Of a stretch of DNA of 64,000 nucleotides, positions 21,431-33,950 are shown in pieces (position 1 is the first letter of the stretch; each line of letters begins with the position of its first letter). Both the position numbers and the translations under genes were made by a program. Origin of the DNA: Macrostomum hystrix. Its lineage: Eukaryota > Animalia > Platyhelminthes. Location of the stretch: NCBI GenBank assembly GCA_950097015.1, contig CATNEN010000025.1, forward strand, positions 186,001-250,000, given 5' to 3'. The notes beneath the pieces were generated by a model. It searched no databases and was not told where the DNA came from. It worked only from the letters and a program-made list of their open reading frames with translations.

Positions 21431-21911
21431 ACTGTAAAAGCTTGTAAATAAAACATGGTAAAAAAACAAGTTTCATTCTCCAGTATAAGAAAGGCGACAG
21501 AGAAAACTGCTGTACCCATTTATGTAGCAGACATTTTAAACTTCACTATATTAAAAGTTATTGGCTGAGAATGGTGAACACGGCATTGGTACAACTAACG
21601 AATGTCACATGAAAGCAGCTATTACACAACACAAACTGAAACTGAAATTTAACAGATTTGTCAAGGCAGTTTAACCAGTAGGTATTAATCAATCCAATGC
21701 ATTAGAACAGTATTAACAAAAGAGTTTAATGAATTGCTATTATAGAAAGTGAACGATGAACAAGGCGACAAATAAAACAGTAAAAGGGCAGCTGACCAGC
21801 CTGTTTGAGGAAATTATAATGCTAACTTTTATAATTTAGAACTTCGAATTAGGTCATCACGGATGTCTATTATTTGCTTTTATTTTGCTGCGTGGGGATG
21901 TTGTTACAGGA

Positions 21912-22700
21912 TCCAATTATCCCTGCAACAGTTGGTAATCCCATAATCCCTGTAACAGTTGGGAATCCCATTATCCCTGCAACAGTTTGGAATCCCATTA
22001 TCCCTGCAGCAGTTGGGAATCTCATTATGGCAGCAACAGTTGGGAATCCCATTATCCCTGCAACAGTTGGGAATCCCATTATCTCTGCAACAGTTGGGAA
22101 TCCCATTATCCCTGCAACAGTTGGGAATCCCATTATCCCTGTAACAGTTAGGAATCCCATTATCCCTGTAACAGTTTGGAATCCCATTATCCCTGCAACA
22201 GTTAGGAATCCCATTATCCCTGCAACAGTTTGGAATCCCATTATCCCTGTAACAGTTGGGAATCCCATTATCCCTGCAACAGTTGGGAATCCCATTATCC
22301 CTGCAACAGTTGGGAATCCCATTATCCCTGCAACAGTTGGGAATCCCATTATCCCTGCAACAGTTGGGAATCCCATTATCCCTGTAACAGTTGGGAATCC
22401 CATTATCCCTGCAACAGTTGGGAATCCCATTATCCCTGTAACAGTTGGGAATCCCATAATCCCTGCAACAGTTGGGAATCCCATTATCCCTGCAACAGTT
22501 GGGAATCCCATTATCCCTGCAACAGTTAGGAATCCCAGTATCCCTGTAACAGTTGGGAATCCCATTATCCCTGCAACAGTTGGGAATCCCATTATCCCTG
22601 CAACAGTTAGGAATCCCAGTATCCCTGTAACAGTTGGGAATCCCATTATCCCTGCAACAGTTGGGAATCCCAATATGGCAGCAGCAATTCGGAATACCAT
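21912..22700. repeat. 27-bp intronic minisatellite (GGGAATCCCATTATCCCTGCAACAGTT)
   Basis: About 29 copies; explains ORFs 21870..22850 and 21874..22764. Confidence 0.95.
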
Positions 22701-22885
22701 TATCCCTATAAAACTTGGGAATATTGAATTGCGTTCAGATTGCGAAAATTGCATTACCAGGTAACGAAATCCAGGAAATATACAGCAATACAACAACGTC
22801 TTAAATTTCTCGCATTGTAAAAAAGCAGCATTGAACCAGCAAATAAACACAGGTTTTAGTTTCCGGTCACAGCCAGCTGACGCAC

Positions 22886-23050
22886 CCGATCAATCAGCAG
22901 GTCCAATGCGGCTGTGCGCAATTCCAATGGGGAAACAATGGAAGCCTCACAGCCCAGGGCCACCCGGCGAAGGCTGGCGCTGGTGAGGAACTCCAGGTCC
23001 TCAGGGCTCAGATCGGCGGCGGTTGATCCGCTCTGCTGCCGGCGATCTTG
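22886..23050 (-). CDS. Predicted exon 2 of the RBR gene (QDRRQQ...LDLLIDR)
   Basis: Acceptor TGTCTTCAG| phase 0; donor CGG|GTGCGT phase 0; GC-rich open frame. Confidence 0.6.
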
Positions 23051-23091
23051 CTGAAGACAACCAATTATATGGCAACCGGTTTTTAATGGAC

Positions 23092-23352
23092 TGCTAGCAT
23101 CTGACTGAGCACAATCCTGAGTCCTTCTAGCACCTGACTGAGCACAATCCTGAGTCCTTCTAGCACCTGACTGAGCACAATCCTGAGTCCTTCTAGCACC
23201 TGACTGAGCACAATCCTGAGTCCTTCTAGCACCTGACTGAGCACAATCCTGAGTCCTGCTATCACCTGACTGAGCACAATCCTGAGTCCTGCTGTCACCT
23301 GACTGAGCACAATCCTGAGTCCTGCTATCACCTGACTGAGCACAATCCTGAG
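23092..23352. repeat. 33-bp intronic minisatellite (ACCTGACTGAGCACAATCCTGAGTCCTTCTAGC)
   Basis: About 8 copies filling predicted RBR intron 1. Confidence 0.95.
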
Positions 23353-23378
23353 ATTAGAATCTAATCACCCAGGCTTAC

Positions 23379-23720
23379 CTGCTGCAGGCGAGGCGACTGC
23401 CTCCGCCAAGGCTGCTGTTGGTGGCGATAATTTGGCTGACGCCGAGGTTCAAACCAGGATTGGGGCTGTTGCTGCTGTTGCTGCACCTCTATAAGAGGCC
23501 TGCCACTGTTTGATAACGCTGGCGGTTCCGGTTGAGTGACCGGTTCAGGCGGCAGAACCAACTGCCGAAGCCCCCGACCCCGACTAATAATGACAGCAGA
23601 TTCACCGCCATTGATGGCACCTCGTTTCGAAATCGGCGGCGGGCCTCCGGCGATGGCTCCGCGAAGATTCTCAGGAGCTGCCAGGCCCACGAAATCGCCG
23701 CTGTCTGCTGAGTCCAGCAT
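23379..23720 (-). CDS. Predicted first coding exon of the RBR gene (MLDSADS...RLQQ)
   Basis: ATG 9 nt after an acceptor with a TACTAAC branch point (23747-23753); donor CAG|GTAAGC at 23378. Confidence 0.62.
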
Positions 23721-24023
23721 TGTTCCAGTCTGGAAGTTGAGCAGAAGTTAGTATTTTCTTTGGATTAATCAGATATTTGTATTACTACTACGCAGTAGCA
23801 TTCTTAAAAAATCATCGAATTGTAGCCCAATTGCAGAGACCAGAGTTTCTTTAGGCACTTTACAAAATCTGAGCACAAAACATTATATTTAAGAGCTAAA
23901 TTGAGCAACATTAAATAACAATAATAGCGAAATATGAACAGATTCGAATCGTGACAAATTGGAACATAATTGCAGTAATTATTGCTGAAACATGATCAAC
24001 TGCTGGGGGTCAACAACTAAATA

Positions 24024-24107
24024 GCTGGGAATCAGCAGAACAGAAGATGATGGACTGGGGAATCAGCAGAACAGAAGCTGATGGACTGGGGAATCAGCAG
24101 AACAGCT
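24024..24107. repeat. 31-bp short tandem repeat (~2.6 copies) downstream of MALSU1
   Basis: GGGAATCAGCAGAACAGAAGATGATGGACTG units. Confidence 0.85.
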
Positions 24108-24183: not shown

Positions 24184-25191
24184 TCACACTGTCTTTGCTA
24201 ATTTATCATTCGGCACTGGCTCTAAAGCAGACTTGGTTCGCCGTATCGATCGCTCTTCGATGGCCTGTCGGGCCACGTCGTCCCAGTTGATGTCGGCGCT
24301 GACAGATGACTCAGCTAATTGCGAGCCGCTTGGCTGACTAACAGCATCAGGAGCCATGCAGGCCTGGTCCAGTCCAGGTCCCAAGCACCAAAGCGACTCA
24401 AGATCGTACTTGGCCCTGGTGGCCGGCAAGAAGCAGTGCAGGCCGCAGTTACCCAGATCAACAGCGGCCCAATTACATCGCGACGGGCTGGAGCCGGCCT
24501 CGATGCTAGGCAGTGTCGGTGAGCGTCTACCACCGGAGGAATTCGACTGCAGACGCAGTTTGTAGACTTTCAACACGTATTCGGCCAGGCTAACCAGGTG
24601 ACGCGATGATCGACCAGTGCAAACAACCAGGTTAGGCGGACGAATCGACATCTTTGACGAAGAGCTCGCCGTCAGGGCCGGAGTGGTTGCTATGGCAACA
24701 ATGTCGCGAGCATTCCTATGCCTCAATAGTTGAACCAGTTCGGCCAGGTCGATGACTCCGCTTGAGCCGAGGCGCAGCGCGTCAATTGGACAATCGACTA
24801 TGAAACGCTGGCGACGCTCGGCTGCTGCGGCAGCCAATTCAGCTCCGGTGAGTTCAGCACGTTGATCATCGCTGCCTAGATATTCCACGTATTCGTCATA
24901 GTCTAACTGACTGTCGTCGAGTTCCTCATCAGCTGCACTGAGGCTGACATTGCTGTGGTGAGAAGCCGCGATGTCGCCAGGCTTTGATGGTGAGGAAGAC
25001 GATTCTGAGCACAGAAAACGACAGTCTTGAGACCAGATAAGCCGTTGCTGTTGAGTAGGCTTCACTAATCTAGCCCCAAAATGACTATACTGATTGAATG
25101 CGACCAAACTGTGGTAGCAGCTGCGGCCAAGACTGCGGCAGGACACCTGCAGCAGCAGCAACAGCTGATGCGATTGTGATGGCAGTGACAG
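24184..25191 (-). CDS. MALSU1: MALSU1 / RsfS (Iojap) family mitoribosome assembly factor
   Basis: LVQLLRHRNARDIVAI, VVCTGRSSRHL and WAAVDLGNCGLHCFLPATRAKYDLESLW match the RsfS fold; Ser/Leu/Arg-rich presequence-like N terminus; frame opens at the acceptor at 25192. Confidence 0.9.
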   Translation of the reverse strand: MSLPSQSHQLLLLLQVSCRSLGRSCYHSLVAFNQYSHFGARLVKPTQQQRLIWSQDCRFLCSESSSSPSKPGDIAASHHSNVSLSAADEELDDSQLDYDEYVEYLGSDDQRAELTGAELAAAAAERRQRFIVDCPIDALRLGSSGVIDLAELVQLLRHRNARDIVAIATTPALTASSSSKMSIRPPNLVVCTGRSSRHLVSLAEYVLKVYKLRLQSNSSGGRRSPTLPSIEAGSSPSRCNWAAVDLGNCGLHCFLPATRAKYDLESLWCLGPGLDQACMAPDAVSQPSGSQLAESSVSADINWDDVARQAIEERSIRRTKSALEPVPNDKLAKTV

Positions 25192-27456
25192 CTGTTAATA
25201 GGTTCAGATGGTTTGGTGATCAGTTCTCATTTCATTTGACTTTTTTTCAATGTCTTGTTTTTAAGATATTATATTGTAGGCTTACTTAATGCATGAACAT
25301 CTAATATAGCTATATATTTTTATTTACTTTAAGCCATGACATAAGCAAAATGTGCTTTTTGAAGAAAATCTATACTTTAAAATTAATTCTAAATTTATTT
25401 TCAGACTTTAAAAGATAAATAAAATAAATATTAAGAGATGATAAAGACATCCTAAAAAGGTTGCTTTGAAAATATAGAACTTCACAGTACCATGTGTACT
25501 CAAAGAGTACATTGATTGTGATCTGCATGTTGCAAAATTTACCTTTACTCAGGAACTTAATATACTTTTACTTTTTAACATAAGAGCATGTGTACATTAA
25601 AATTATTTTTATTATTTTTTTCATGGTTTTTTTCATTTTTTAATTAATTAAAATAATATGCCATAAATTGAATACTGGTCTTCATCTGTAATATGTAATT
25701 ATTTTAATTATTTTAAAACTATGAATTTAAAATAAAGGTTCAGGACTAAAGTAAACAATATAAAAATCTATTAGCTGGCCATAGCTACTAATATTTTTAC
25801 AACCTATAACAGTCACAGTGCATGGCTGGCTAGCAAATTTGACTTAAATGCTTAGTTATTAGTAGGCTAGGTCTACAAAATACAAACAGCAATATCCCAA
25901 GCAAATAATTTGACACTACTTAAGCATCTTATATCATCTTTTTAATGAAAATTACAAAAATGTATTTTAGTAAGTCTGCCAAAGACAGACACAAAAGCAA
26001 TCAGATTTCTAATATTTACAATGAACCAGAACACTATGCCTTACTGCACAGTTGTAAAGCAAAGTACAGTTAATAGCAACATGCTTTCATTAGGCAGGCC
26101 ACAGGCATAGGCCACATAGCTACCAATTGTCTATTTTTTCTTGTAAATTGACTAAAAAATAAATTCACAAGCCTTTTAGGCGTTTCATATTTCGACGAAA
26201 CAAGTACAAAAGCAATATAAACCGTTTCATCGAATTACAATGAGAATATTTAGAGTATGTTAGTTAATAATCTAGCCACTTGAATAACAAATCCGTTTAC
26301 TGATGTTAAAATATTTACTACTCTTATTTCTTAGTTTTAATGCAAAAAAGAATTATTTGAAATATTTTACATTACGACAAAATTATCCACTAAATGAATA
26401 TCCATCTAAATGATCATGTGAATATTCTGGCCAGTAGTGGATTACTCTATAAAATTATCTGTCGATAAAAACTGATGTCGATTTTGAGATGCAAAGCAAA
26501 AAATGTTAAATCATCGAAATTAAGAAGTAATTTTCCTCACAAACTATTTATACTTGGGTTAGAACTGCACTTTAACCCTCCAATTCATAGCCCATTAATC
26601 GATCAGTATATACTATTGGTGGCTTGTGTATAGGAAAGTATGTATAGAACCAAGTCAGGTACAGAAATGGCTTGAGCACAAAATAAGTTATAACACTTTC
26701 AGTTACAGCGAAGCTGTGGTAAGCTCGCAAGCCCAAAGCGCGAGTCTGTAAAAGGCAATTGGTGGGGAGCCCCTGTTTAGATGACAAAAATTAATGCGCC
26801 TTAGAATGCCCACAAACAGCTGTGGTTGAGAGCCACTGACTGTACATTTACAAAGTACATCAAACTGGGTTAGGGGTAATTTCTATTCTCAACTCCGTAT
26901 ATTCTTTGAGTCGATTACAAAAATAGATCATTTAACCACTACAGTACGCGTACGTATTTAGTAAATAGCAATCTAAAAAGTAGACGGCGGTCTTTACTCT
27001 GCCATGCTCTTTCACTATCGTATCGTTGCGTAGAAACAAAGTTAATATTGTTGATTAGATGCAAAAATCATGTCTAAATAATTCAGAAAGAGTAGAGAGG
27101 GAATAGTACTATAGTAGAGCGTGAAGGTACACAGCAAAATGGAAAGTATACAGAAGCTTAACTCACTGGCTCCCCAAGCCTGGAATTATCCAGGCTAGTT
27201 CAGATCAGACTGGTTGTTTCTTGTTTGGAATCTATACGAAGAGTTAAGCTATTATATCAACACGTCAAAATGATTGCTAAAAAAGTTTTTTATTGTATGG
27301 CGTTTGGTATATATTGGATGTTCCAATAGCAGATGCGAGAGCAAATACCATTTAAAACACGATCCAGTCGCTGAATCCATCCAATCTAAAATTCACTTCC
27401 ACAGCACTACCAAGGTGAACAAACTAATAATTCCGACCCCGTAAATTCTGGGCTAC

Positions 27457-29245
27457 ATGGCTGATGTGGAAGACGTTACCAAATCAGAAGGCAACAGTGG
27501 CTGCACTGCGTCCTATCGGCTAAGGCAGCAGCTGCTAAAGCAGGCAATTAAATCGACAACAGCGCATGGACTGTCGAGAGTCGCCAGCGACAAGCACCTG
27601 GGTCTGCGCTTGTTCTGGGCCGCTGCATTTCTGTCCATGCTAGGATTGTTCCTCAATGAGCTGTCAAACGCTGCGGTCAAGCTGCAGTCGTTGCCCGTTA
27701 CTACCGCTGTGGAACCGTCTTCAGAATCTTTCGTCTTCCCTGACGTGCACATCTGCCCCATGAGTATTGTCTCCGCAAGCTATCCTTCGCAAATGACGCC
27801 GGAAGATGCCAACTACACGCTTGAGCAGTTTGACAAAATAAATCGTCTTGTAGATTATCTGAATGCGACCACAGCAGAAAAAATAGAAATGGCAGCGCTG
27901 GCCTTTCCATCAACAGTGCAGCGAAGCTTTCTAAGTGGAAGACTCGGAATGCGACAAGAACAGACTATAATCAGCGCGAAAATTTATCCTTCAAATAGAC
28001 GTCTTGAGTTAAACGTTGATATCGAGGACGAGTCACATCACAGGCGTTTAAAATGTTTTCGAGTTCGTGTCAAGAACTCTGAGTCTCGCAACCTTTTGAA
28101 CAGCATCACAAACTGCCTGGATCTGATCCTGTATGCGGATGTGACCTACAACCATACGCTGCGATTCTCTGAACATAAGATTGACTCACGAGGTCTAGCA
28201 TTTTCGAACTACGACTCATTAATAAGTGCCGGTGTTCACCTGTTCTTCACAGAGGAGGCTGCGTACCCTGATGACTACAGTGCATCGGTTGTACTCAGTC
28301 CCGGCTTAAAGCATTACATTAAAGTTTCTATGTCCCACTTGAGAATGGTTGAGAAAAAAGGCCAGTGCGTCAGTGGAACCCCCAAGGTATCGTTTCTTAA
28401 TGAACTCGATGAGGAGCCTGCCGAATTTAAATCCAATTTAGCAGGCAAGTGCAAAATACGAGCTTTTTTCGGGAAGCCCAAGCTCGTAATTTAAGCTACA
28501 TTTCATGATTTTTTCTTTAACTAAAATTCCAGCTTGCTACGCTAAGTACTTCACAGACATAACACAGCGCTACTTAAACTGCAAAGTACCCGGGCATTTC
28601 CCGATTCCGTCTGAATATCGAAACCTGCCAAACTGCTACAACCTATCGGACTATCTCTACAACGTAAACCACACGGACAAAAAATTGGAACGGTTAATGA
28701 AGACATTGAAACTGCTTCAAACTACAAGTCACAATTCGGAATTGCTTGATTTAGTAAATGGTATGAAGCTGGTGGAGAAAATTTGCGAATTTCAGGTGCC
28801 ATGCGATGAGCTAGAGTACACAGCTCAACTCAGCTCGAGCTTGTATCCTGTGAAGCAGGGATACCAGACTTCATTGGCTTCATTGTTGCAGCAATTGTTA
28901 CAAGAAAGAAAAAGCCAGGGTTACTCAGTCCCAGGACTGGAATGGCTAACCAATCTACTGCTAACGGCCAACACTACCACGGAAAAGGCGACTGCTTCGG
29001 ACGCTCTGTCAAATAATATTATTCGGACACTGATTTGCGCCCGTCAGTTCCGCTCGACGAGCATCACACAGAGCATCTCATTTGGTTTGAGTGATTTTCT
29101 AGCTTCTAGCGGCGGTCTGATGGGTCTCTTCATGGGTGCCAGCGTCCTTACTCTGGTCGAGACGGTTGATCTAATAGTGTGTCTTTTGGGAGGACACAGG
29201 CTCAGTGCTAGTAGAACCACTGCAAGGAAAAGTCGCGATGAATAA
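27457..29245 (+). CDS. DEG/ENaC (ASIC-like) channel subunit, 2 exons (27457-28444, 28533-29245), 566 aa
   Basis: STTAHG N-terminal HG motif, TM1, FPDVHIC, and TM2 GGLMGLFMGASVLTLVE with GAS filter; 88-nt GC-AG intron restores the frame. Confidence 0.92.
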
Positions 29246-31039: not shown

Positions 31040-33950
31040 CAGTTAAAGTGACTCCGCAAAGCAAACAAAACCAAGAGCCCTGCGGATCAGACCGCCTATC
31101 TTGAAGCTATTCATGAGCTCAACAGGGAGATCAGGACTGCCAAGGCCCAGAAGTGGCGTCAATACTGCGAGGAGCTAGAGGGCTCACACCCCACCTCCAG
31201 GATTGTCAAAGCACTTACGATGGACAAAATTTCCAAGCTCTCCTCGGTAAAGCGAACCGACGATACGTCAACTGACAACACAGGGGAAACGCTTGAGGTT
31301 ATGCTCTATGCCTTCTTCCCCAACGAGCCAGCCAATCCGACCAACCCAGATCACACTGAGGGAGGCCAGATGCTTGCTGCCTCTATCATAACGGAGGACT
31401 GCATCATCAAAACGGCCACCTTCTATAAGCCTTTTAAGGCTCCAGGGCCCGATGGCATCGTACCTGCCTTTCTTAGAGAGGCGGTTAAATGCCCAGGTTA
31501 CCTGCGCAATCTTTACAGCCTCTATCGAGCCTGCATCACGCTCGGGTACGTCCCGCAGGCATGGACCGAGGCGAAGGTGATTTTTATCCCGAAGCCAGGC
31601 CGTCCGGACTACGAGTCCATTAAATCATTTAAACCAATCAGCCTAACCATCTTCCTGGTCAAGCTGATGAAGAGACTAGTGCTTTTGCGCCTTCTCTCAG
31701 TGGAACTGAAGAACACGCCGCTCAGCGACAACCAGCATGCTTTTCGGGAGGGTCGCTCCACCGAAAGCGCGCTACACGTTCTGTTCGACAAACTGGAGAA
31801 AGCTGTGCTTGGCAATGGCTTTGCTCTAACTGTCTTCCTGGACATTAATCGTGCCTTTGACAACGTCCTCTTCGAGGCGTTCCGCAAAGCTGTATGTTAG
31901 AGACACACTCACTCTTCCCTCACCAGATGGATCATGTATATGATCAGTCATCGCATGGTCACTGCCAGCCTGCTGGGCCACCAACGGACGATCCCCCATC
32001 CGCAAAGGGAGCCCGCAGGAAGGGGCGCTCTCTCCTATTCACTGGAACATGGTCATTGACGAGCTCGTCCGGGACGCCCGTCCTGAAGGTGGGTAATGCG
32101 GATGATGTCACTGCTGTGGCGTCTGGCCCATCTCCTGATACTCTCAGGAACCTCCTTCAGAATTTCATCCACTCTGCTGAGCAATGGGCGGGTCGCTGTA
32201 GTCTGAAGCTCTCCGAGACTAAGACTCCAGTGATCATGTTCACCAGCAGAAAAAAGTGGCAGATACGGCCACTTAGGCTTTACGGAAAGAAAATTTCCTT
32301 CTGTAAGCCAACCAAACGCCTAGGAATCACCGTGGACCATAGGCTGAACTGGTCTCCCCATGTTCATTCCAAAACCAAGAGGGCCCTCGCAATCCTCGCG
32401 CAGCTGCGAAGGGACGTTGGCACCACCTGGGGGCTCACCCCCAAGCGCTTCTGGTGGATCTATATTGCAACGGTCAGGCCAGCTGTCTCGTTCGGCAGCT
32501 TGATCTGGGCCAGCGCCCTGCAGATGAGGACCTGCCTGGAGGCACTTAGGAGAACGCAAGGGAGCGCATGACCATGAGAGCCCCACCGTCTGCTCCTTAC
32601 GACGGCCTCGATGCCTTCCTTGACGCTCCCCCGTTGGACATTTTTGTCCACAGGGAAGCCGCTAAAATACGCGTCGGCTCACTGACGCCGGCGTCCGCTT
32701 CACGCCGCAAAGAGCCATGGCAAAGCGCAAACTTCTGCCTCACGCCGACCTGTGCCTTAGAGATTTGAAAGATAGCGGCGGACTCCACGTCTTATCTGAC
32801 GGCGAACCACGCACTCTCAAACCCACCCCGCGCAACAAAATCATCATCCCCTCGAGGGAAGACGCTAACGACCACTGGAACCACCAGGAGGTCCATTGCT
32901 ATACGGACGGAATTCTTAAAGACGGCCTTGCCGGCTTTGGGGTCTGCATCCTGATCAACGCCGCGTCATCGCCACGCACGCCCAACATACTGGGAGGCTT
33001 TCCAAGGTCTTCCAGAATGAAATCCTTGCCATCAGCTCCTGTGCCGCAGAGCTGAATGCCAGGAATACGAGAGGAGAGACTATCGTTATCCACTGACAGC
33101 CAAGCGGCCTTACAAGCCCTTTGCCGCACCACTACGTGCTCCCGGACAGTCGCTGACTGTGCCCGGCAACTCAACCTCCTGGCTCGTAGCAACACGGTCA
33201 GGCTGAGCTGGATCCCAGGGCATGCGGGCTTCCCAGGGAACGAGCTAGCGGATACCCTCGCCAAGCAGTGTGGTTCTGGCTTCTCCTGGGCCCTGCTCCC
33301 CTGGTTCCGATCCCCATCACGGTCATCAATCGCCAAATTGATGACTGGGCTGAGTCCCTCCACAGGGACAGATGGACGGGCACCCAGAACTGTCGACAAT
33401 CCCGTGCCGCCGTCGCCTGTCTCGCAGGCTTAGGAACATCCTTTTGAGCCAAACCGGAAGGATATCCGCGCCCCCGCCATGACCCTCACGGGCCACGTCT
33501 ACCTCGCAAGGCACTGTTTCCTCCGGGGCGACCTTGAGAGTGAACTTTGCACCTTTTGTGAGTACGAAAACGAAGATGCTGAGAACTTTGTGTGTCACTG
33601 CCCTTTCTTTAACAGAGACCGGCTACGCTACCTCGGGCCCAACCCGTCTATGGACAAGATTTGCCAGCTCGATAGCATTCCACGGCTCGTCCAGTTTCTT
33701 CCGGGCGACAAGACGAGCCACGTTCTTCCCTACGGAAGACAACGCTGCAGGACGGACCGGCGGACCACCCTGACCGGCCCCGCGCCCTCGCCTCTCTGCG
33801 GGCCTACAGGGGTTAGCGGTATGGGAGATCCTCGCCTCCCCGCTGTGTCCATGGACCACCCTGCAGCTAAGTCAAGTAACTCAAAGGTACGTATAGACAT
33901 TTGAACGCCCAGTATTGTTCGTGCTGAGATCAAACTTCTAGGAATCAAAA
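31040..33950 (+). mobile_element. 5-prime-truncated non-LTR retrotransposon with RT, RNase H and C-terminal Cys/His knuckle (I/Loa-like group), degenerate
   Basis: KAPGPDGI, QHAFREGRSTESAL, FLDINRAFD, NADD (degenerate YADD), YTDG, TDSQAAL, WIPGHAGFPGNELADTLAK and CTFCEYENEDAENFVCHC; several frameshifts. Confidence 0.92.

What the first reader, a model, noticed from the sequence alone, without database searches (positions are those of the whole stretch)
24184..25290. MALSU1 has no start codon of its own: candidate spliced-leader-donated AUG
Seen: the frame opens exactly at an AG acceptor (25193-25192, phase 0) with TAA immediately upstream. The first in-frame ATG (KMSIR) lies inside the RsfS domain and cannot be the start. 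A nearby donor (AA|GTAAGC at 25285) would only add an exon ending in an in-frame TAA. Established: flatworm spliced-leader exons end in a conserved AUG that can act as the initiator. Inference: SL trans-splicing gives M-LSLPSQSHQLLLLLQVSCRSLGRS..., a plausible mitochondrial presequence, making translation of this gene dependent on trans-splicing.
Basis: partly seen in the sequence, partly recalled or inferred. Interest (0 to 1): 0.75.

Follow-up and report, generated by a model that had tools for sequence, protein, structure and literature searches.

The report
MALSU1 start codon from spliced leader
A flatworm gene for a mitochondrial ribosome-assembly factor has no start codon of its own and most likely borrows the AUG at the end of the trans-spliced leader, a trick known in flatworms since 2006, so this is a sound but ordinary new example.

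Summary
On the minus strand a single 335-codon frame (25191-24184) opens two codons after TAA (25197-25195), directly behind a CAG acceptor (25194-25192). Its first in-frame ATG is codon 181, inside the RsfS domain (codons 151-268). The best solved relative is human MALSU1.

Indirect support is good:
- Macrostomum spliced leaders end in ATG.
- None of the four consensus GTRAG donors in the 2.27 kb upstream can deliver an in-frame ATG.
- The syntenic M. lignano orthologue is annotated 5'-partial. Its boundary lies within one codon of the homologous position, directly after the last 10 nt of the spliced leader.

That M. lignano tract is either a genomic fossil or an artefact of RNA-seq polishing. 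Either way, leader AUG and this codon are adjacent in frame.

I put the leader-donated AUG at about 0.68. This scan has already reported the same mechanism on other pieces of this genome (POP5, NF-YB and others). It is a new member of a known kind, of low to moderate interest.

The parts
24184..25191 (-). Single coding exon of the MALSU1/RsfS homologue: 335 codons plus TGA at 24186-24184. The first codon is CTG and there is no ATG before codon 181.
   Evidence: 58% identity to M. lignano PAA80086/PAA49429. Best solved relative is human MALSU1, 5ool_u, E 6.4e-12.
25192..25194 (-). CAG acceptor in phase 0 (AG at 25193-25192). This is the proposed trans-splice site for the spliced leader.
   Evidence: Context TATTAACAG|CTG. 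It carries the CAG of the M. lignano trans-acceptor motif [T/C]TNCAG but not the T at -5.
25195..25197 (-). In-frame TAA that closes the frame upstream.
25024..25191 (-). First 56 codons: a presequence-like N-terminus with no D or E and 5 K/R, collinear with the M. lignano N-terminus from the first residue.
   Evidence: composition only; no targeting predictor was available
24388..24741 (-). RsfS domain (ORF residues 151-268).
   Evidence: PF02410, E 3.8e-13
24649..24651 (-). First in-frame ATG (residue 181), inside the RsfS domain, so not a plausible start.
25328..25342 (-). Rival: a possible cis mini-exon ATG TCA TGG CTT AAA (MSWLK) in phase 0 with the weak donor GTAAAT (25327-25322). The intron to 25192 would be 136 nt.
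25280..25288 (-). The exon would end in an in-frame TAA, so it cannot supply a start.
23720..23735 (-). Downstream same-strand neighbour: TTCCAG acceptor (23735-23730), then 9 nt of leader (23729-23721) before the A of its own ATG at 23720. The gene order is conserved with M. lignano, so this is a possible two-gene unit.

Best explanation
The window carries the single-exon MALSU1 (mitochondrial RsfS-type ribosome-assembly factor) gene of a Macrostomum flatworm; earlier notes of this scan name it M. hystrix. Its pre-mRNA starts somewhere in the AT-rich 2.27 kb shared with a divergent ASC channel gene. The stretch up to 25192 would be removed as an outron. The about 35-nt spliced leader, which ends in ...UUAUUGCAUG, would be joined at CAG|CUG (25192|25191). 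The leader's terminal AUG then lies in frame and gives M-LSLPSQSHQLLLLLQVSCRSLGRS..., a basic, acid-free N-terminus suited to mitochondrial import. Shown: the absence of an own ATG, the acceptor, the domain, and the state of the orthologue. Inferred: that the leader is actually joined at 25191 and that its AUG is the initiator.
For: (1) There is no in-frame ATG between TAA 25197-25195 and codon 181, which lies inside RsfS 151-268. (2) The SL of M. lignano is CGGTCTCTTACTGCGAAGACTCAATTTATTGCATG. The SLs of M. hystrix and M. cliftonense are identical where they overlap it, and the authors take them to end in ATG. Use of the flatworm SL AUG as initiator is established: Cheng et al. 2006, as cited in PMC9851317 and PMC12582326, with more than 40 S. 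mansoni cDNAs needing it. (3) Orthologue: all three M. lignano copies are annotated 5'-partial, single-exon, starting at PLPTVS, which aligns with the window's (L)SLPSQS. Directly upstream the assembly reads CTCATTATTGCATG. Its last 10 nt are identical to the SL 3' end, and 14 of 16 nt match with one 2-nt gap. Only 10 of 5000 shuffles reached that local score, and no AG acceptor is present. M. lignano gene boundaries were set from SL-read peaks, and the assembly was polished with RNA-seq. So fossil or artefact, SL-AUG abuts this codon in frame. (4) The loci are orthologous, because the downstream neighbour is conserved. (5) Only 4 GTRAG donors lie on the minus strand in 25192-27456, and none can bring an in-frame ATG. 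(6) G+C jumps near 25200-25240. (7) The N-terminus has no D or E in 56 residues and 5 K/R, like the M. lignano one.
Against: The acceptor is only average: TAACAG lacks the T at -5 of [T/C]TNCAG, and only 11 of the last 20 nt are pyrimidines. The gene is not downstream in an operon, since its upstream neighbour is a divergent plus-strand ASC gene, so trans-splicing is not structurally required. Only 10-20% of M. hystrix genes were called trans-spliced. A phase-0 ATG mini-exon exists 136 nt upstream. The first 20 residues hold only one K/R, so the presequence is weak at its very tip.
Confidence: 0.68

Rival explanations
1. A short upstream exon is cis-spliced to 25191 and supplies the ATG. The best candidate is 25342-25328 (MSWLK) with donor AAA|GTAAAT and a 136-nt intron.
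For: The mini-exon is in phase 0 and has no stop. About 35% of M. lignano donors are not GTRAG. Earlier notes of this scan report tiny ATG-bearing first exons in this genome (unchecked).
Against: The donor lacks G at +5. No consensus donor in the 2.27 kb can deliver an ATG. The M. lignano orthologue is single-exon, with its N-terminus at the homologous position and no extra residues. The candidate lies in 12-28% G+C sequence.
Confidence: 0.15
2. Translation starts at a near-cognate codon (CUG at 25191-25189 or one of the following CUG/UUG/GUG codons), with or without trans-splicing.
For: In an ungapped DNA alignment the M. lignano ATG falls on the window's CTG at 25191-25189 (reading). Several in-frame CTG/TTG/GTG codons follow.
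Against: The context is poor: C at -3 and T at +4. Non-AUG starts are rare. An SL AUG one codon upstream would be scanned first if the mRNA is trans-spliced.
Confidence: 0.08
3. The gene has lost its start (a young pseudogene), or the assembly carries a base error at the start (ATG read as CTG).
For: The positions of M. lignano ATG and window CTG correspond.
Against: The 335-codon frame is intact, with 58% identity to M. lignano and invariant RsfS core blocks. If this window is from the published M. hystrix assembly (species name taken from earlier scan notes), it was polished with long reads and then five rounds of Illumina DNA reads.
Confidence: 0.04

Closest known systems
Schistosoma mansoni mRNAs that use the spliced leader's 3'-terminal AUG as initiator (Cheng, Cohen, Ndegwa, Davis 2006, J Biol Chem 281:733; cited in PMC9851317 and PMC12582326)
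   Same: A flatworm SL ending in AUG. An acceptor in phase 0 directly before an ORF that has no ATG of its own. The leader supplies Met1.
   Different: A different flatworm order (free-living Macrostomorpha) and a different gene. Here the junction is inferred and not seen in cDNA.
M. lignano MALSU1 orthologues PAA80086 / PAA49429 / PAA65917 (BOX15_Mlig005197g1, Mlig004559g1; 'partial')
   Same: Single exon, same downstream neighbour, the N-terminus begins within one codon of the same place, and no internal ATG before the RsfS domain.
   Different: The assembly shows ...TTATTGCATG (the SL tail, with ATG) in place of an AG acceptor. So the start may be encoded in the genome there, or the tract may come from RNA-seq polishing.
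Human MALSU1 (C7orf30), PDB 5OOL/5OOM and others
   Same: An RsfS fold domain preceded by a long N-terminal extension. It is the best solved hit, E 6.4e-12, query residues 147-286.
   Different: The human gene has an ordinary genomic ATG (own knowledge). Identity is confined to the domain.
Other SL-AUG cases noted by this scan in the same genome (POP5, NF-YB, mitochondrial TyrRS, a thimet-type peptidase)
   Same: The same pattern of an ATG-less ORF at a phase-0 acceptor. For POP5 and NF-YB the notes say transcripts showed the junction (AI notes, not checked here).
   Different: For MALSU1 no transcripts could be examined.

Membership tests
RsfS / MALSU1 (PF02410) | RsfS domain above the Pfam gathering score | tested here: met
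   49.9 bits against a cut-off of 21.6, residues 151-268 covering profile positions 2-98 of 98
RsfS / MALSU1 (PF02410) | Closer to mitochondrial MALSU1 than to bacterial RsfS | tested here: met
   The top four PDB sequences are MALSU1 (E 6e-12 to 6e-11). Bacterial RsfS scores E 2e-6 or weaker.
RsfS / MALSU1 (PF02410) | N-terminal mitochondrial targeting presequence | tested here: inconclusive
   No D or E in 56 residues and 5 K/R, but only 1 K/R in the first 20. No targeting predictor was available.
RsfS / MALSU1 (PF02410) | Binds uL14m and blocks premature subunit joining | not testable with these tools
   Biochemical property
SL-AUG-initiated flatworm mRNA (slORF) | The organism has an SL that ends in AUG | tested here: met
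   From the literature: the M. lignano SL sequence, and the M. hystrix and M. cliftonense SLs identical where they overlap it. The genus is supported by the only hit being M. lignano at 52-58% identity. The species name comes from earlier notes only.
SL-AUG-initiated flatworm mRNA (slORF) | AG acceptor directly before the ORF in phase 0 | tested here: met
   CAG 25194-25192 | CTG 25191
SL-AUG-initiated flatworm mRNA (slORF) | No genomic in-frame ATG able to give a complete protein | tested here: met
   The first ATG is codon 181, inside the domain. No consensus donor can bring an ATG. One weak mini-exon is not excluded.
SL-AUG-initiated flatworm mRNA (slORF) | SL-bearing transcripts joined at the acceptor | not testable with these tools
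No transcript-derived protein was found in the protein collection.
SL-AUG-initiated flatworm mRNA (slORF) | The orthologue shows the same junction | tested here: met
   The M. lignano 5' boundary at L001:6001 follows the SL tail, in frame and within one codon of the homologous position.
Downstream gene of an SL-resolved operon | A same-strand gene ending a short distance upstream | tested here: not met
   The next gene upstream is a divergent plus-strand ASC channel gene at 27457-29245. No minus-strand gene lies in 25192-27456.

The most novel reading that the evidence does not exclude
The SL tail in front of the M. lignano orthologue is a real genomic fossil. A trans-spliced MALSU1 cDNA would have recombined into its own locus and hard-wired the leader's AUG, while the species in this window keeps the older acceptor-plus-borrowed-AUG state. 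The orthologous pair would then capture a start codon moving from the spliced leader into the genome.
Probability: 0.25. Interest if true: 0.55.

Novelty: new member of a known kind. Interest (0 to 1): 0.3.

Why it matters
If confirmed, MALSU1 joins the set of flatworm genes whose translation, and here also mitochondrial import, depends entirely on trans-splicing. Standard gene finders will report such genes as 5'-partial or will truncate them at an internal ATG, as the M. lignano record shows. It adds no new mechanism. The side observation matters more. The M. lignano assembly carries the SL tail where an acceptor is expected. That is either a warning about RNA-seq polishing at trans-splice sites or an example of a leader-derived start codon fixed in a genome.

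Tried and rejected
- **Same-species transcript-derived proteins:** the full-length word search, the N-terminal 115-aa word search and the exact look-up found nothing. The only relative is M. lignano.
- The family is not open and the claim does not rest on absence of relatives.
- **Joined SL+exon sequence:** not sent to any search tool. M+ORF was used only for a local composition count.
- **Supplements of the M. hystrix genome paper:** searched for MALSU1, RsfS, PF02410 and the Mlig ids, with no occurrence.
- **SL gene or SL relic in the window:** none. The 21-nt SL tail has 0 matches at up to 3 mismatches. The 10-mer at up to 1 mismatch occurs at chance level. The 60 nt upstream of 25191 show no SL similarity.
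- **Operon-downstream explanation:** rejected, because the upstream neighbour is divergent.
- **Classical dispersed retrocopy in M. lignano:** rejected, because the downstream neighbour is syntenic and there is no poly(A) relic.
- **Systematic RNA-polishing overwrite of M. lignano acceptors:** not seen at the other annotated 5' boundaries in the fetched loci. These are PIG-S with CTTCAG| and the downstream gene with AAAAG| in L001 and TTGCAG| in L003. A single inserted T turning TTGCAG| into TTGCATG| remains possible.

Full report
**What is there**

On the minus strand the sequence reads ...CCTAT TAA CAG | CTG TCA CTG CCA TCA... TAA lies at 25197-25195, CAG at 25194-25192, and the first codon after the AG at 25191-25189. 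From there one frame runs 335 codons to TGA at 24186-24184.

Pfam places an RsfS domain at residues 151-268 (E 3.8e-13, 49.9 bits against a cut-off of 21.6). The best solved relatives are four MALSU1 sequences (human 5ool_u, E 6.4e-12), ahead of bacterial RsfS. The only in-frame ATGs are residues 181 (24651-24649) and 279, and residue 181 lies inside the domain.

- In-frame CAG codons recur at 25167-25165 and 25149-25147, so an AG at the frame's opening is not remarkable alone.

**Organism and setting**

The only relative found by the word search is Macrostomum lignano PAA80086, 52% identical in that search's local alignment and 58% in the alignment. A second allele or homeologue, PAA49429/PAA65917, is in the same cluster. 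Earlier notes of this scan call the genome M. hystrix. I did not verify the species, only that a congener fits.

The upstream neighbour is a divergent plus-strand amiloride-sensitive channel gene (27457-29245, PF00858). MALSU1 is therefore the first gene of its transcription unit, with up to 2.27 kb of 32% G+C sequence ahead of it.

Downstream on the same strand lies a gene with its own ATG at 23720, nine bases after a TTCCAG acceptor. Its last exon matches the gene downstream of M. lignano MALSU1, so the two loci are orthologous.

**Direct test not possible**

Three searches gave no transcript-derived protein of this species: the full-length search, the N-terminal 115-residue search and the exact look-up. 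I did not send a joined leader-plus-exon sequence to any search tool. M+ORF was used only in a local composition count. I left the large representative search unused, because the family is clear.

**Indirect evidence for the leader-donated AUG**

1. *The leader ends in ATG.* The M. lignano SL is CGGTCTCTTACTGCGAAGACTCAATTTATTGCATG. The SLs assembled for M. hystrix and M. cliftonense are identical where they overlap, and the authors take them to end in ATG. Use of this AUG as initiator is established for flatworms (Cheng et al. 2006, cited in PMC9851317 and PMC12582326).
2. *No consensus donor can supply a start.* Only four GT[AG]AG donors exist on the minus strand between 25192 and 27456, and none is preceded by an in-frame ATG after the last stop. 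The only near candidate has the weaker donor GTAAAT.
3. *The composition shifts at the right place.* G+C rises from 12-28% to 40-68% across 25240-25160.
4. *The N-terminus looks like a presequence.* With a leading Met it has no acidic residue in 56 positions and five K/R, like the M. lignano N-terminus.
5. *The orthologue points to the same junction.* This is the most telling line and is set out next.

**The M. lignano orthologue**

All three M. lignano copies are single-exon and annotated 5'-partial. They begin at PLPTVS..., which aligns with (L)SLPSQS... of the window.

The 14 bases before that boundary read CTCATTATTGCATG. The last 10 are identical to the SL tail, and 14 of 16 match with one 2-nt gap. 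Only 10 of 5000 shuffles reached this local score anywhere in the 60 nt, and here the match is anchored at the junction. There is no AG at the boundary, and an in-frame TAA lies six codons upstream.

**How to read the M. lignano tract**

The Mlig_3_7 assembly was polished with Pilon using RNA-seq as well as DNA reads. Its gene boundaries were cut at peaks of SL-bearing reads. The tract therefore has two readings:
- It is a true fossil of a trans-spliced cDNA.
- It is a polishing artefact. One inserted T would turn a perfect TTGCAG| acceptor into TTGCATG|.

The other annotated 5' boundaries in the fetched loci keep their AG: PIG-S with CTTCAG|, and the downstream gene with AAAAG| in L001 and TTGCAG| in L003. 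Overwriting is therefore not systematic, but this does not settle the question.

Under both readings the leader's AUG and this codon are adjacent and in frame in M. lignano mRNA. No upstream coding exon is involved there. That transfers to the window by orthology, within one codon.

**Evidence against**

- The acceptor TAACAG lacks the T at -5 of the [T/C]TNCAG trans-acceptor motif, and only 11 of its last 20 nt are pyrimidines.
- The gene is not an operon-internal gene.
- Only 10-20% of M. hystrix genes were called trans-spliced.
- Tiny ATG-bearing first exons have been noted in this genome by earlier agents (unchecked).
- The first 20 residues carry one basic residue only.

**Verdict**

| Reading | Probability |
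|---|---|
| Leader-donated AUG at 25191 | about 0.68 |
| Cis mini-exon | about 0.15 |
| Near-cognate start | about 0.08 |
| Pseudogene or assembly error | about 0.04 |

The mechanism has been known since 2006. The same scan has already reported it on other pieces of this genome, namely POP5, NF-YB, mitochondrial TyrRS and a peptidase. This is a new member of a known kind, of low to moderate interest. The most novel reading still open is that the M. lignano start codon is a genomic fossil of the spliced leader.

Noticed in passing
L001:5987-6000 (M. lignano NIVC01000598.1:539639-539652); the same in L002 and L003: The assembly shows the last 10 nt of the spliced leader (14 of 16 with a 2-nt gap), including its ATG, directly before the MALSU1 CDS where an AG acceptor is expected. 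This is either a genomic SL fossil or an artefact of Pilon polishing with RNA-seq.
   Followed up: partly
window 22865-23735 (-) and L001:7627-9152: The gene downstream of MALSU1 is conserved in order and strand in both species. In the window a TTCCAG acceptor lies 9 nt before its ATG at 23720, and the spacer after MALSU1 is about 450 nt. This may be a two-gene SL-resolved unit. The product has no Pfam match.
   Followed up: partly
L001:1621-1666 (-): M. lignano PIG-S is annotated from the base after a CTTCAG acceptor. The SL AUG would be in frame with its own ATG 13 codons downstream, with no stop between them, so two alternative N-termini are possible.
   Followed up: no
window 21911-22722, 23094-23352, 24027-24105: Three tandem arrays: 27 nt x 30, which is open in several frames and mimics long ORFs; 33 nt x 7.8, inside the downstream gene's intron; and 31 nt x 2.5, in the MALSU1 3' flank. 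The M. lignano locus is likewise embedded in a satellite of about 33-35 nt on both sides.
   Followed up: no
window 27457-29245 (+): An amiloride-sensitive sodium channel (ASC, PF00858) gene, read as two ORFs separated by 10 nt (27457-28494 and 28505-29245). This could be a very short intron, a frameshift or a stop.
   Followed up: no
window 31220-33900 (+): Retroelement remnants: ORFs with reverse transcriptase (PF00078) and RNase H (PF00075) matches, broken into several frames.
   Followed up: no
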